Shown piece after piece: positions 26,901 to 32,900 of a stretch of DNA of 64,000 bases. Origin of the DNA: Podarcis filfolensis (Eukaryota); NCBI GenBank assembly GCA_964270895.1, contig OZ185453.1; one strand, given 5' to 3'. Positions within the stretch are counted from its first letter, which is position 1, and every line of letters starts with the position of its first letter. The notes below the pieces were generated by a model. It did no database searches. It saw only the letters and a list, made by a program, of their open reading frames with translations, and was not told the DNA's origin. The translations under genes and the position numbers were made by a program.

Positions 26901-29900
26901 GTAAAGAGGGGGCGCGCGGCTGCCCTTCAAGGCTGGGGGGCGCGTGCATGGGGGCTGCAGATAAATCCTGGGTGGGGGAGGCAGTTGCATGGGGAGAAAA
27001 GAGGGGGCGGCGGAGGCAGGTGCAGAGGGGGCGGCGGCGGCGGCAGGGGGGCTTTCCTCTTGCACGGTCGGTCCCTGCTGCTGCTGCTGCTGCTGCTGCC
27101 ATTTGCAAGCTTGCCTAGGAAACTTTTGCAGGCGGAGCGCTCATTCTCCTCCCTCGCATCCCTCAGGCCCGGGGAACGGCCGCGGCAAAAAGAAGAAGCA
27201 CAAGAAGGAGAAGGCGCCCCCGGCTCCGCAGGCAGAGAGCGAGACCCCCACGGGGTGAGTGGGGCGCCCAGTGCATCTTACCTCGGGGGGAGGGCGGCGG
27301 CAGGAGCGACCCTGCCCCGTCGGAGCTGAATGCGGGCGAGAGGTCCTGCTTCTGGAAACTGCAGCTCTCGGGTGGGGGGGGGGTCCTCCCCGTTTAGAGG
27401 AAGCCGGCATGACTTGGGGGGGCAGGTTTGCGGAACAGGTGCTGGGGAAGCCGCAAGGGGGAGTGCGGGGCTGGCTGCGCCTTCTCAGGGCAGATTCACA
27501 CGTGCATGTTCGGAATCGTGGCTTGAGTGGACGGGCCAACACGGGTATCAATGCCTAAAGCGCCCCGCTTTTCGGGGGAGCCCGTGCAGGCTCTCCGCTG
27601 CCAGCCTTCAGGCTGCAAGAACGCCAGTGGCACCTGTGCACGTGTAAGCGACTTTTAGTGTTTGGAGGGTGGAAATTTCAGGAAATCGGTCAGTTTCATA
27701 ACACGCCTTTGTCTCTGGAAGATTGCATAGTTTGCATGTGTGAATGTCCATCACAGGTATAACGCTATATATAATCTTAAATGTAATTAAGTGGAGGCAG
27801 TTTGACTGCAAGTAATTTGGGTGTTGAGAAGACCAAATCATGGTTATGATTTCCATTTCTCTGGCAAGGGGGAAAAATGATGATAAAGCTTCTGCTACAA
27901 CTTAAAACACAGGAGCGCTTCTACATTGCTGCATTGACATGTAAAGCAGTCAGGAGAGCTGGTCTAGAAAGTAATTCAGCTTTCTGATGATGAAGGCTCA
28001 ACCCCCAGTCTTCAAGGCAAAACCTGAGTAGGAGTGGCTGTGTTTGCTCACTTGAGGACCTTTACCTCTTCAACAATGAATTTTATTGTGAGCTTCCGGG
28101 AGTAAGGAGCTTCGGTTTTTGCTCGTTGTTGTTGCCTAGACAAAAGCCTGTGCCATGATAAGTGTGTTAGGCTTTTAAGAGGCCTCAGTTCATAAACGTG
28201 GATTGGGTGCCTTTTGCAACAGGATGGCTGTGACAGACTAATAAGTCCAGATGACTCGAACAAGTGAACCAAGCTGGATCCCTCAATATGTTGTTGGGCT
28301 TCTACTTCCATCATTCCTTGGGGCTGATGGGAGTTACGAGTCCAACAACATCTGGAGGGCACCAGGAGAGGGAAGGCTCCCCTGAGATAAGGTAATTCCT
28401 GCCATCATCTGAAATTATTATTATTATTACTATTATTTTATGTATATCCTGCCTTTTTCCCAAACCGGGACGCAAAGTGAGTTACGGATAAAATAGAAAC
28501 AGCTAAAAGACATGGGGAAAACTTATTAAACATTAATAAAAGTAAAACAATTTATAAAACAGATTTATTAAAAATATAGATAGTTACAATAAAAACATCC
28601 CAGCGGTTCCCAAAAGCCTGTTGAAACAAGGAGGTCTTCACCTGGCAGTGCAAGGACAACAAGGAGGGAGCCAGTCTAGCTTCACCAGGTAGGGAATTCC
28701 CAAGTCTGGGAGCAGCCACCACCGAGAAGGCCCTCTCCCATGTCCCCACCAAGCGTGCCTGTGAAATTGAGTTTATTGTCTTCCCTTTTTAAGGGGAGTG
28801 CCACTTAAAAGTGTGACTGCTAAAGGAGTAGTGCTGGTGCTGAGGCCTTTTTAGAGGAATGAGGCTTCCTGGAAGCCCCATCCATGGGGGCTGGAAATGG
28901 TGCTGTAGGTTACTGGGTGGATGTACAATATCTTTTTCTTGGTGCCTTTGGAGAAGGTTGGTTCCGAATCTGAGTCAGATGCAACAAAGGAAAAAAAAAG
29001 GTTGTTTGGTTCTGTGGGGAACCTAGATCATGGGTAGGCAAGCTAAGGCCTGGGCGCCGGATCCGGCCCAATCGCCTTCCAAATCCAGCCCGTGGACGGT
29101 CCAGGAATCAGCGTGTTTTTACATGAGTAGAGTGTGTGCTTTTATTTAAAATGCATCTCTGGGTTATTTGTGGGGCATAGGAATTCATTCATTTTTTCTC
29201 CCAAAATGTAGTCCGGCCCCCCACAAGGTCTGAGGGACAGTGGACCGGCCCCCTGCTGGAAAAGTTTGCTGACCCCAGGCCTAGATCATCTTGCTGTGCT
29301 GATTTAGATTGCAGATGGGATTTACACGATTAAATAAAAAAAAGTATGTCCACATAGGAAACTAGCAAGCTACGGCAAAACTGTGCTAAAACTCCCCTCC
29401 CATTCTAGGGAGCTTTTAGTTTCTTTTCCATGGGAGAGCAGCCAGCCTTGAGAGAGAGCATCTGCCGCGGTTTGGTCTGGACCTGGGGCCTCCTGGTGAG
29501 CTAGGCCCAGGCCATGCAGGGCTGGCCGCTTCCCCTGGCCGGTCTCATCCCGCTTCCCTCGCCCAGATTCCATTCCCATCCTGGGCGGCAGCTGCCGGGG
29601 GCCATGGGGCTATTTTTAACCCCCCGCCCGCCTCTGATGTCTCTGTGCACATTTGGGCTCTGGCGGGGAGGAGGGTTCTGAGCTCACAAGGTATTAATTC
29701 CTCTTTTACTAAGGAGGGGAGCATGTGGACAGATAAGGTGCCCAGCTGCCGGCATGCTTTGCTGAGGCAGTCTTCTGTCTCCATCCCAGGGCCCGTCACT
29801 CCAGCCTGGCTTTCACGCCAGAATCAGCAGCTCCCGCCCAGATCTGGGAACTTTGCTCTGAGGAGTATCTTCTCCCTGGGGAAGGCGTCAGGAACAGAGC

Positions 29901-32900
29901 AGGTCTTCTCCCCTTGCCCTCCCCCCAAATACACACCTTCCTTTGACAAGAACTAGAAGATCAGCAGAGAAAAGGGTGCCAGCTAATTTCATTTTATGCT
30001 TGGCCACTCCGAATCGCTTCCCTGTGTATCTTTGGAGATGGGGGAAACGATGCAAGAGGGACTAGGAGGCAGTAGGTATGTCTAAAATTATTGTGAAAGG
30101 AGGGTGGTGTTGTTATTTTATTGTGCCATTGATGTGCATGGCGTTTTACAAAACGATATAAACCTAAAAGAGAGGTCCCTGCCCTGAGGAGCTTACTCTC
30201 TGAATTTTGACAGAGTGGGAGATGGGAGGTTTAAGAATATGAGCAAATAAAAGTTACAGTTCCTTAAACTTTCTGTTGGGGGGGGTGAGAATTAATGCCC
30301 ATGTGGTTCGTCCTCTCCAGAGGTGACTCTCAGGTTGGAAGCAGGCAAAGGATAAACAGCTGCTTACAGAAGCAGGATAAACATGAATTAAAAAGTAAAT
30401 GACATCATTGGGAATTGAGATGCCCCTGACAAGTCTCTCTTTCTCCCCCCTGCCCCCCCAACTCTTCCAGGCCACTGAGTCCCTCCTGCTCAGATGAGGC
30501 TCCAAGCACCCCTCCAGTACCCCCCCTGCCTTTCCCTGCTGTGATCGGAGGAGGGCAGCTGGGATCTGATGATGAGGAACAAGAGGACCCCCGAGATTAC
30601 TGCCGAGGTATTTGGGCAATGTGGGGAGTGGGGCAAGCTATTCTTCCCCCAAGCTGGGGCAGATAAGGGGCTTTCTGTTCGGAATTGTAAGCGAGGTGGG
30701 CAGTACCAGGTGCTGAGAGCTGATAAACAAAGGAAGACTGCATTGCTTTCATACCCTCTGCTTGTTGAGCTTCTAAAGTTGCTCTTGTTTCCAGCAAGAC
30801 AACCCAGAGAGCTAGACCCTTGGTCTGGTCCAGCAGAGCACTCTTCTATGCCCCTAAAGAATAACAACAAAACTGTTCAATGTCTTTAGAAATTGCCCAC
30901 ATGCAGTACTAGAACATGAGTGAGAAACCTTCCAATGCTGTTGAACTACAGCTCCCACAATCCCTGACCTTTGGCCAGGTTGGCTGAGGCTGATGGGATC
31001 TGTAGTCCTCCAAATGCTGTTGGGCCAGAAGTAACCCACCCCAGCGCTAGGTGCACCATGGTCCAGGGTGGCAATTGTGCTGGGCCAGGATGGGGGTGTT
31101 CTCTGTGACTCTGGCAACTGGTATAATTAACCTGTCCTCCCCTTGTGCCTTGCTAGGTGGGTATTACCCGGTAAAGATTGGGGACCTGTTCAACGGGCGC
31201 TACCATGTGGTGCGGAAACTCGGCTGGGGGCACTTTTCGACTGTCTGGCTTTGTTGGGACATTCAGTGAGTATGGCAGGGTGGGGAGGCTTCATTTCTGT
31301 CCCCTACCAGAGAATTAAGGAGTGAAGGCTAGTACAATGGACTTCACTTTCCTGAAAAATGGAAAAATCAAAGGCAGCGTTTTCTAACTGGCCAGATTAT
31401 GGAGCAACAAAGGGAGGCTATGTGAAGCAAGAAATAAGGGAGGAAGAATTAAGGGAAATGGAAATACTCAGGAAGTGATTTTTATACCATATACAGTGGT
31501 ACCTCTGGATGCGAATGGGATCCGTTCCGGAGCCCCGTTCGCATTCTGAAGCAAACGCAACCCACGTCTGCGCGTGCGCTGGTTGCGATTCGCCACTTTC
31601 ACACATGCGCGTGACGTCATTTTGAGCGTCTGCGCAAGTGGCGAAACCCGGAAGTAACGCGCTCTGCTACTTCTGGGTCACCGCGGAGCGTAACTTGAAA
31701 ACGCTCAACCTGAAGCACATTCAGCCCGAGGTATGACTGTACTGTAGATTCCTAGCAAGGAGAAGAAAAAGAGAGGAATGTGCTGAGGGCTTATATGGTC
31801 ATGATTGTTCTGCTGCTCTTGAGGACTAGAAGCTTGCTTAAATTTAAACTTGTTGTCATCATAGTTATTAGTTTGCACAAAAGCCCATTTGAGCCTTTGG
31901 AACCACACATTGTGATCATTTTACCTAGTCTAGGTCCTTAGCAGGAGGACTGATAAGGTTGGAAATGCAAATCCAGAGGTTATTCACAGGATTGCAGCTT
32001 TTTACCTGTAATTAGGTATTCCAAAGTAGCCAACGTCTTCAGTAAGAGGCAATGGGGTGGGGGCAGAAACTCAGCCTTTCTTACCAGGCTGCTGATTGTT
32101 AAGTACAAAATAATTGATGGGCATAAAGGGATTGCCAAATCTGTGTTCACAGACCCTGGGAAGACCCATGGGGATGGTGGGGGGGTCCCTGAGTGTGTGG
32201 GGGACAAGGAGAAGGGTGGGCATGGTAGTCAAGTGTCTTAATAGCAGAGGAACTTGCTGTTTCCTACTGCGTAAATCGTTAAGTATTCCCACTTTGCTTT
32301 TATGAATTTGTTATTATTTTGTAATCACTACTATGTCCTTAACTTGTTTTATCTGAGAAGTCTTGATGCTCCTGTGGAGATTGCAAAGTGGGGGGCAAAA
32401 TTTAAAACAAAAAGTGGAAAGGGGGAGCCAGGACTAACCAGTCCTTTTCTTCTCTGTCTCCCCCCTCCCCCCGCAAGGCGGAAGCGTTTTGTGGCCCTCA
32501 AAGTGGTGAAGAGCGCTGTGCACTATACAGAGACAGCCGTGGATGAGATAAAGCTGCTGAAATGTGTGAGTTGTCCTCCAGTTCTGGGGGCCCTGTAGAA
32601 GGAGTAGTGATTAAATAAAAGGAGAGGAAGTTTGTGTCATTTTGGCATACTTGGAACCCCTTCTGCTTGGGAGCCCTGAGCCATAAACTACCGGTGCTCA
32701 TGTGCATGGCACTCTTTATTATTTTATCTGATCCCTTGGACAGCCTTGGCTTGGAGTAGATGAAGCACCCCTACCCTGGATCCATTTGCTCTGTTTACTA
32801 TCTAGATCCCACCCTTTGCTGTCAGACACAGTGTCTTCTGTTCCCTTAGCCAATCTAATCTGTTTCTCTCCATATGACCTGGACTACAACTTCCATCAGC

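What the first reader, a model, noticed from the sequence alone, without database searches (positions are those of the whole stretch)
29589..30075. Internal MEF2/E-box muscle promoter with its own in-phase first exon: two-promoter SRPK3
Within SRPK3 intron 2 a locally GC-rich patch carries CAGCTG (29589), a consensus MEF2 site CTATTTTTAA 16 bp later (29610), a GC box, AGATAA and a second CAGCTG. Paired MEF2 and E-box sites are the classic myogenic module, and mouse Srpk3 (Stk23) is an established MEF2 target. Downstream, gagATGg starts [12 protein letters not shown] and ends AG|GTATGT in phase 2, exactly what exon 30471 needs; it ends in GGS like the mammalian first exon. A donor at 29691 and an acceptor at 29950 could form a spliced 5'UTR that removes intervening uORFs. 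Together with the CpG-island start, this predicts about 581-aa muscle and about 603-aa broadly expressed kinases differing in a basic N-terminus.
Basis: partly seen in the sequence, partly recalled or inferred. Interest (0 to 1): 0.72.

Follow-up and report, generated by a model that had tools for sequence, protein, structure and literature searches.

The report
Conserved muscle-type second promoter of SRPK3
Inside the lizard SRPK3 kinase gene lies a real alternative first exon behind a MEF2/E-box switch that matches the only promoter mammals keep; related species already annotate the exon, so it is a sound, modestly new confirmation.

Summary
The window is the PLXNB3-SRPK3-IDH3G locus of a lacertid lizard close to Podarcis.

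- **The exon is real.** It ends at 30075 and splices to 30471 in phase 2. One of four RNA-like runs shows the 30075>30471 joint. RefSeq models of Podarcis, Lacerta, Zootoca, Rhineura, snakes, turtles and passerines already begin with this exon.
- **The promoter block is conserved.** Within intron 2, the only long matches to a cordylid lizard (82%) and a snake (72%) are the 29518-29899 block and the exon.
- **The E-box/MEF2 pair is ancient.** CAGCTG followed by a MEF2 site occurs just upstream of the short first exon in all nine other amniote loci fetched, including platypus, cat and whale. Chance gives 0.09 per 64 kb. The "internal" promoter is therefore the counterpart of the mammalian SRPK3 promoter, a published MEF2 target.
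- **The upstream start is the main form.** The CpG-island start is spliced in all four runs. Its Lys-rich exon was not found in the three mammals.

Not supported:
- the 29691/29950 5'UTR intron;
- conservation of the GC box;
- conservation of the second CAGCTG.

The start site and muscle specificity remain untested.

The parts
29571..29576 (+). CATTCC, an MCAT/TEAD-like motif about 12 nt upstream of the E-box
   Evidence: Unchanged in four of the five squamates, CAATTC in the snake. CATTCCT in alligator and CATACCTT in platypus, cat and whale lie at a similar distance upstream of the E-box. Function is inferred.
29589..29594 (+). E-box CAGCTG, paired with the MEF2 site
   Evidence: Unchanged in all 10 amniote loci at the matching place.
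29610..29619 (+). MEF2 consensus site CTATTTTTAA (YTAWWWWTAR)
   Evidence: Fits the consensus in all 10 loci: CTATTTTTAA/G and TTATTTTTAA in sauropsids, CTATTTATAG/A in mammals. The pair is expected 0.09 times per window by chance.
29650..29655 (+). E-box CATTTG
   Evidence: Unchanged in five squamates.
29665..29740 (+). Most conserved squamate block. It holds TATTAAT (29692-29698; a possible TATA-like core element), E-box CATGTG (29722-29727) and GATA site AGATAA (29731-29736).
   Evidence: Nearly unchanged from lacertids to cordylid and snake. The role as core promoter is inferred from mammals, where a TATAAAT follows the MEF2 site.
29743..29748 (+). Second CAGCTG
   Evidence: Present only in lacertids; lost in Hemicordylus and Pantherophis.
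29996..29998 (+). In-frame upstream ATG in weak context (tttATGc). It is the start of the lacertid RefSeq models ([14 protein letters not shown]...).
   Evidence: Absent in Hemicordylus and snake.
30038..30075 (+). Coding part of the alternative first exon: ATG in strong context (gagATGg), 12 codons plus 2 nt (phase 2), donor AG|GTATGT
   Evidence: Joint 30075>30471 in run X7. The ATG, the 12-codon ORF, the phase and the donor are kept in Hemicordylus and snake. RefSeq N-termini: MGETTQEGQEGS (Rhineura), MGKTAQIEIEGN (snakes), MGETPEGT (passerines), MGELPDRP (turtle).
30076..30470 (+). Intron between the alternative first exon and the common exon
   Evidence: GT..AG, skipped in run X7.
30471..30607 (+). 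Common exon (..[27 protein letters not shown]), accepting both first-exon routes
26858..26900 (+).
   Evidence: Joint 26900>27167 in runs X5 and X7. RefSeq N-termini [14 protein letters not shown].
27167..27254 (+). Lys-rich exon 2 of the CpG-island form
   Evidence: Joint 27254>30471 in all four runs.

Best explanation
The region 29520-30075 is a second, internal promoter of SRPK3 with its own short coding first exon. The core module is an MCAT-like CATTCC, the E-box CAGCTG and a MEF2 site. In squamates, a further E-box and a strongly conserved block with TATTAAT, CATGTG and AGATAA follow. Transcription starting somewhere between about 29640 and 30000 gives an mRNA whose first exon ends at 30075. 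That exon joins the common exon at 30471 in phase 2. It replaces the 43-residue Lys-rich N-terminus of the CpG-island form with [12 protein letters not shown], or in lacertids with a 26-residue version starting at ATG 29996. The module and exon are the counterpart of the single promoter and first exon of mammalian SRPK3, a published MEF2 target in heart and skeletal muscle. The most likely mechanism is therefore activation by MEF2 together with myogenic bHLH factors in striated muscle, while the CpG-island promoter serves other tissues. Shown here: the motifs, exon use, deep conservation and correspondence with mammals. Inferred: the start site, MEF2 binding and muscle specificity.
For: - Motifs and ORF are at the stated places.
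- The pair is expected 0.09 times per window by chance.
- The GT..AG joint 30075>30471 has depth 13.6 in run X7, beside the CpG-form joint at depth 27.4 in that run. The X7 contig over 29332-30076 has depth 9.8, against 2.8-4.1 for its other intron contigs, and ends at the donor.
- RefSeq isoforms begin with this exon. In lacertids, P. muralis XP_028567555.1 is identical over the 26 residues. Rhineura, six snakes, two turtles and two passerines have it too.
- In the 3.2-kb intron the only long matches to Hemicordylus (82%) and Pantherophis (72%) are 29518-29899 and the exon; Hemicordylus adds one short, weak 71-nt match at 30278-30346.
- One CAGCTG>MEF2 pair on the gene strand lies upstream of the short first exon in each of nine other loci. 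Only two other pairs occur in 288 kb, both on the opposite strand.
- The first exon is short, in phase 2, with an AG|GTATG- or AG|GTAGG-type donor in lizard, turtle, platypus and whale.
- Synteny PLXNB3-SRPK3-IDH3G holds.
- MEF2 control of mouse Srpk3 is reported as in 10.1101/759829 and PMC8430752, both citing Nakagawa 2005.
Against: - No start-site data exist. Contigs cannot show RNA ends.
- The X7 contig runs on upstream to 29332, probably through unspliced pre-mRNA of the longer form, so it does not place the start.
- The joint was seen in one of four runs, in one contig, with 24 nt on the short side. That length is expected where two paths merge in a k=31 graph.
- The run's tissue is coded, so muscle specificity is not shown.
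- Alignment of the lizard module to mammals is weak by itself (nhmmer E about 1 for platypus, 0.01-0.03 for turtle and alligator). The case rests on motif order and position.
- A start near 29640 would leave a long 5'UTR with upstream ATGs at 29723 and 29754.
Confidence: 0.8

Rival explanations
1. The conserved block is an intronic muscle enhancer that acts on the CpG-island promoter. The 30075 exon would then be a minor by-product, with no promoter of its own.
For: The CpG-island form is the main form in all four runs. No start site is mapped. MEF2/E-box modules often work as enhancers, and the mouse element is called an enhancer in the papers read.
Against: The short ORF, its phase and its donor are kept from birds to lizards and snakes, and annotation pipelines build transcripts that start there in many species. 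In mammals the same pair lies about 100-270 nt upstream of the only first exon, with a TATAAAT 24 nt downstream in placentals. No joint into the exon from upstream was seen.
Confidence: 0.1
2. The exon ending at 30075 is an internal cassette or poison exon of the CpG-island transcript, not a first exon.
For: The Dermochelys model P0157 carries the turtle version inline (..SAMGELPDGPRS..) between the Lys-rich exon and the common exon. A usable acceptor (tctttggag|ATG) lies right at 30037/30038.
Against: No joint from 27254 or 26900 into 29900-30038 appears in any of four runs. In the lizard, entry at 30038 from phase-2 exon 2 would shift the frame into a stop, by my own reading of the sequence. 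In-frame stops lie at 29954 and 29984. RefSeq models in lacertids, snakes, turtles and birds start with the exon's own ATG.
Confidence: 0.06
3. A chance cluster of short motifs beside a chance mini-ORF.
For: Single MEF2 sites and E-boxes are common: 12 and 44 in the window. Phase-2 ATG..donor mini-exons occur about 0.1 per kb.
Against: The pair is expected 0.09 times per window, yet sits at the matching place in ten loci spanning all amniotes. The block is the best conserved part of the intron. The splice is seen in RNA.
Confidence: 0.01

Closest known systems
Mouse Srpk3 (Stk23/MSSK1) muscle promoter/enhancer regulated by MEF2 (Nakagawa et al. 2005, Genes Dev 19:2066; not held in the library, cited through 10.1101/759829 and PMC8430752)
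   Same: Same gene and same synteny. An E-box followed by a MEF2 site lies just upstream of a short phase-2 first exon that joins the ..[10 protein letters not shown] exon. The pair is present in platypus, cat and whale at that place.
   Different: In the lizard it lies inside the gene, 2.7 kb downstream of a CpG-island start. E-box to MEF2 spacing is 15 nt against 5 nt in the mammals. The site is CTATTTTTAA against CTATTTATAA. Distance to the ATG is about 420 nt against 100-270 nt. MEF2 dependence was not tested here, and the mouse sequence itself was not examined.
RefSeq/Gnomon alternative-first-exon isoforms of sauropsid SRPK3, for example Podarcis muralis XP_028567555.1 and Rhineura floridana XP_061470168.1
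   Same: Same exon. The first 26 residues of the P. muralis model equal the window's ORF from 29996. Rhineura, snake, turtle and passerine models start at the ATG matching 30038.
   Different: These are automatic models, with no statement about a promoter or tissue. I found no paper that describes them.
Two alternative N-termini of the paralogue SRPK2, one basic (from my own knowledge, not tested here)
   Same: One kinase body is combined with either a Lys/Arg-rich or a non-basic N-terminus through alternative first exons.
   Different: This is a different gene, and no MEF2 module is known to me there.
Paired E-box/MEF2 muscle control regions such as those of myogenin, desmin and MCK (from my own knowledge)
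   Same: Close pairing of a CAGCTG E-box with a consensus MEF2 site, here with MCAT-like and GATA motifs nearby.
   Different: No binding or reporter data exist for this element.

Membership tests
MEF2/E-box muscle promoter or enhancer | Consensus MEF2 site YTA(A/T)4TAR | tested here: met
   CTATTTTTAA at 29610; fits the consensus in all 10 loci.
MEF2/E-box muscle promoter or enhancer | Adjacent E-box for myogenic bHLH factors | tested here: met
   CAGCTG ends 15 nt upstream of the MEF2 site and is unchanged in 10 loci.
MEF2/E-box muscle promoter or enhancer | Conservation beyond the neutral level | tested here: met
   This is the only long intronic block matched from the lacertid to the cordylid (82%) and the snake (72%). 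The pair is kept in turtle, alligator and mammals.
MEF2/E-box muscle promoter or enhancer | MEF2 protein binds, and activity in muscle needs the site | not testable with these tools
   Needs EMSA or ChIP and a reporter with the site mutated.
MEF2/E-box muscle promoter or enhancer | Muscle-restricted use | tested here: inconclusive
   The joint appears in one of four runs, but tissues are coded and contigs give no expression levels.
Alternative promoter with its own first exon | The exon is spliced to the common exon in RNA | tested here: met
   Joint 30075>30471, GT..AG, run X7; RefSeq isoforms.
Alternative promoter with its own first exon | Nothing is spliced into it from upstream | tested here: inconclusive
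   No such joint in four runs. Contigs drop rare forms, and one turtle model has the exon inline.
Alternative promoter with its own first exon | A mapped transcription start upstream of the exon's donor | not testable with these tools
Counterpart of mammalian SRPK3 exon 1 and promoter | Same neighbours and same downstream exon | tested here: met
   PLXNB3 lies upstream and IDH3G downstream on the opposite strand in the window, turtle, cat and whale.
Counterpart of mammalian SRPK3 exon 1 and promoter | Same intron phase and donor type | tested here: met
   Phase 2 in all. Donors: AG|GTATGT in the lizard, AG|GTATGC in the turtle, AG|GTATGT in platypus, AG|GTAGGG in the whale.
Counterpart of mammalian SRPK3 exon 1 and promoter | Alignable promoter sequence | tested here: inconclusive
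   The squamate profile hits turtle (E 0.011) and alligator (E 0.025) at the right place. Platypus reaches only E about 1 at the right place. Motif order is shared.

The most novel reading that the evidence does not exclude
SRPK3 of early vertebrates had an SRPK1/2-like CpG-island start with a Lys-rich N-terminus. That start is kept in fishes, frogs, turtles, crocodilians, birds and squamates. The MEF2/E-box promoter with its short first exon was added before the amniotes split. Mammals then lost the CpG-island start and its basic exons, leaving only the muscle promoter. This would explain why mammalian SRPK3 is muscle-restricted and lacks the basic N-terminus. Sauropsids would then be a natural system with both forms.
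Probability: 0.55. Interest if true: 0.5.

Novelty: new member of a known kind. Interest (0 to 1): 0.4.

Why it matters
The finding places the published MEF2-driven muscle promoter of mammalian SRPK3 in a wider frame. The same E-box/MEF2 pair and short first exon exist in reptiles and birds, as the second of two starts. This dates the muscle switch to before the split of mammals and sauropsids.

It also suggests that mammals became muscle-restricted by losing the other start. And it predicts two kinase forms that differ in a basic N-terminus, whose effect on localisation or substrate choice could be tested.

SRPK3 is a human myopathy and intellectual-disability gene, so knowing which control elements are ancient helps in reading non-coding variants near its promoter. 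For annotating this genome, the finding simply confirms that both first exons should be kept.

Tried and rejected
- **Nakagawa 2005.** The paper (DOI and PMC1199576) is not held, so I could not read the published mouse MEF2 site. I used non-human mammalian loci instead.
- **Literature.** Searches for an SRPK3 promoter or alternative promoter found nothing relevant.
- **Protein representative search.** The last exon gave mostly fragments. One turtle protein (P0066) served as a bridge to the full-length relatives.
- **Loci not obtained.** The age of the module before amniotes, and its presence in a bird genome, were therefore not tested at DNA level.
- **5'UTR intron 29691>29950.** Rejected: no joint, a colinear RNA contig, and the acceptor AG is lost in Lacerta.
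- **GC box and second CAGCTG.** Not conserved.
- **Wrong frame.** One peptide was translated in the wrong frame and its hits are ignored. The turtle N-terminal peptide, 31 residues typed from the start of P0285, gave the valid result.
- **Human material.** The protein row named as human (P0305) was left out of all comparisons. The N-terminus of an unnamed Logan protein (P0306) was printed; it looks human-like and was not used further. No human contig was fetched.
- **Other limits.** Exons were handled by reference, and lengths come from arithmetic and from relatives' database proteins.
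Full report
**What the window is.** Stop-free frames show plexin-B3 cytoplasmic exons on the + strand at about 2.5-17 kb. SRPK3 exons follow from about 26.9 to 50.7 kb on the + strand, and IDH3G exons lie on the - strand from about 56 kb. This is the neighbour order found at the mammalian and turtle loci fetched later. The N-terminal exons are nearly identical to SRPK3 of Podarcis, Lacerta and Zootoca. 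Intron 2 is 94% identical to Podarcis muralis and 86-91% to Lacerta agilis. The source is therefore a lacertid lizard close to, but not the same as, P. muralis, P. raffonei or P. lilfordi.

**Check of the observation.**
- CAGCTG at 29589;
- CTATTTTTAA at 29610, a perfect YTAWWWWTAR;
- CCCGCCC at 29623;
- AGATAA at 29731;
- CAGCTG at 29743;
- gagATGg at 30038, opening [12 protein letters not shown];
- the donor AG|GTATGT after 30075, in phase 2;
- the acceptor before 30471.

The patch is GC-rich (61%) but has CpG o/e of 0.37, so it is not a CpG island. Of the 12 MEF2-consensus sites in the window, this is the only one in GC-rich sequence and the only one next to a CAGCTG. The pattern CAGCTG-N5-30-YTAWWWWTAR occurs once in the window, against 0.09 expected from shuffles. 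Phase-2 ATG-to-strong-donor mini-exons are not rare in themselves, at about 0.1 per kb. In intron 2 the only candidates end at the 30075 donor, three nested ATGs.

I rebuilt it: ATG 26885 to 26900, then 27167-27254. An in-frame ATG at 26858 lies 9 codons further up ([14 protein letters not shown]) and is the start used in database models.

**RNA evidence.** The one read-laying run used contigs of four RNA-like runs from two related species. These runs do hold spliced RNA.
- The GT..AG joint 27254>30471 is in all four, at depth 27-75.
- The joint 26900>27167 is in two.
- Intron contigs lie at depth 2-7.

This confirms 'intron 2' and shows that the CpG-island form is the main form in these samples.

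The predicted joint 30075>30471 (GT..AG) is present in run X7, in one contig at depth 13.6. In the same run, the contig over 29332-30076 has depth 9.8 against 2.8-4.1 for other intron contigs, and it stops exactly at the donor. The short side of the joint is 24 nt. That is expected where two paths merge into the common exon in a k=31 graph; the CpG-form joint of the same run has 28.

In the other three runs the CpG-form contig runs on far into the common exon without a branch. So the alternative exon is absent or rare there. Use of the exon is therefore real and depends on the sample, but tissues are coded and contigs cannot show RNA ends. No joint 29691>29950 was seen, and no joint from upstream exons into the alternative exon.

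**Database models.** I reached full-length relatives in steps: a search with the last exon, then a turtle protein as bridge, then cluster listings. The alternative first exon is already in automatic RefSeq models of many sauropsids:

| Group | N-terminus in the model |
|---|---|
| P. muralis X4, XP_028567555.1 | [26 protein letters not shown]\|RPLS.. (identical to the window's ORF from ATG 29996) |
| P. raffonei, P. lilfordi, Lacerta agilis, Zootoca | as above, with small changes |
| Rhineura | MGETTQEGQEGS |
| Six snakes | MGKTAQIEIEGN (MGKTAQMEIEGN in Notechis) |
| Turtles | MGELPDRP, MGEPPDGP |
| Passerines | MGETPEGT |

The ATG at 30038 is in strong context and is kept in Hemicordylus and snake. 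The ATG at 29996 is in weak context and is specific to lacertids. Zootoca has GTG at the 30038 position, so only the upstream ATG can serve there.

The 619- and 636-residue forms add an optional 24-residue exon.

**Conservation of the promoter block.** Nine SRPK3 loci were fetched: Lacerta, P. muralis, Malaclemys, Pantherophis, Hemicordylus, platypus, alligator, fishing cat and gray whale.

Within the 3.2-kb intron 2, the matches to the cordylid are:
- 29518-29864 (82%);
- the exon, 30027-30117 (78%);
- a short, weak 71-nt match at 30278-30346 (76%).

The only match to the snake is 29519-29899 (72%). In the alignment, the following are unchanged or nearly so in five squamates:
- CATTCC at 29571 (CAATTC in the snake);
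- the E-box CAGCTG;
- the MEF2 site;
- CATTTG at 29650;
- a 75-nt block, 29665-29740, holding TATTAAT, CATGTG and AGATAA.

The GC box decays to CCGTCT in the other species. The second CAGCTG is found in lacertids only. The proposed acceptor at 29950 is AAC in Lacerta.

**Correspondence with mammals.** A profile of the squamate core finds the same place in turtle (E 0.011) and alligator (E 0.025). It finds the platypus place only weakly, at E about 1. The motif test is clearer. In each of the ten loci there is exactly one CAGCTG-then-MEF2 pair on the gene strand, always just upstream of the short first exon. Only two other pairs occur in 288 kb, both on the opposite strand.

Sauropsids have CAGCTG-N8-15-YTATTTTTAA/G (8 nt in the turtle, 13 in the alligator, 15 in the squamates). 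Platypus has CAGCTG-N5-CTATTTATAG, 273 nt before its ATG. Cat and whale have CAGCTGGGAGGCTATTTATAA, followed 24 nt later by TATAAAT, about 100-130 nt before the MSAS/MSTS start.

The first exon is short and in phase 2 in all four lineages examined:

| Species | First exon | Donor |
|---|---|---|
| Lizard (window) | 12 codons + 2 nt | AG\|GTATGT |
| Turtle | 8 codons + 2 nt | AG\|GTATGC |
| Platypus | 8 codons + 2 nt | AG\|GTATGT |
| Whale | 17 codons + 2 nt | AG\|GTAGGG |

The 'internal' promoter of the lizard is therefore the counterpart of the only promoter of mammalian SRPK3. Papers I could read describe that gene as a direct MEF2 target in heart and skeletal muscle (10.1101/759829 and PMC8430752, both citing Nakagawa 2005). 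The original paper was not available.

**The other start.** The Lys-rich exon is found in turtle and alligator DNA but not in the platypus, cat or whale loci. In placentals only 1.7 kb separates the end of PLXNB3 from the SRPK3 start. None of 57 mammalian N-termini is basic. Frog and fish SRPK3 do carry a basic N-terminus. This suggests that mammals lost the CpG-island start. I rate this as likely but not shown.

**Mechanism and rivals.** The best reading is that MEF2, with myogenic bHLH factors and perhaps TEAD and GATA factors, opens this promoter in striated muscle. The resulting mRNA encodes SRPK3 with a short non-basic N-terminus. The start site is unknown. By analogy with the mammalian TATAAAT and the alligator CTATAT after the MEF2 site, the conserved TATTAAT at 29692 may be the core element. 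That would put the start near 29725, but this is inference.

Rivals are a pure intronic enhancer (0.10), a cassette or poison exon (0.06) and chance (0.01). The reasons against each are given in the rival entries.

**Novelty.** The exon is already in automatic annotation of sister species, and MEF2 control of the gene is published for mouse.
- the evidence that the E-box/MEF2 pair and the first exon are shared by all amniotes;
- the evidence that in sauropsids they form the second of two starts;
- the evidence that mammals appear to have kept only this one.

Noticed in passing
window 26858-27254: The CpG-island 5' end of SRPK3 is confirmed by RNA joints 26900>27167 and 27254>30471. The likely start is ATG 26858 ([14 protein letters not shown]), 9 codons upstream of the ATG at 26885. 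P. muralis models X1 and X3 also read 13 further residues past the 26900 donor.
   Followed up: partly
window about 40973-41044: An optional 24-residue exon ([24 protein letters not shown]) accounts for the 636/612 and 619/595 pairs of lacertid RefSeq isoforms. It is 96% identical to the P. muralis insert.
   Followed up: partly
window 28929-29339: A very high-copy interspersed repeat, at depth up to about 180,000 in RNA-like contigs, lies just upstream of the promoter block. The stretch 29022-29267 is absent from Lacerta agilis, so it is a recent insertion.
   Followed up: partly
L008 5990-6075 and L009, mammalian loci: Several mammalian Gnomon models extend the SRPK3 ORF upstream (MRGPPPGPTGAAARG..). 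The extra ATG is the ATG inside the TATAAATG box, so these extensions are probably artefacts. Elephant and shrew models even translate through the E-box/MEF2 pair (..AAGRLFIKAG..).
   Followed up: partly
L003 3839-3915 and L007 2163-2235: Turtle and alligator share a conserved stretch right after the MEF2 site (GGGGGGTGAGGT..CAGCATGCACTGC) that squamates lack. Its function is unknown.
   Followed up: no
snake proteins P0190, P0195, P0349, P0356: Snakes have a third annotated first exon (MPIAALPAKLLQRVG..) that joins the Lys-rich exon. I did not look for it in the window.
   Followed up: no
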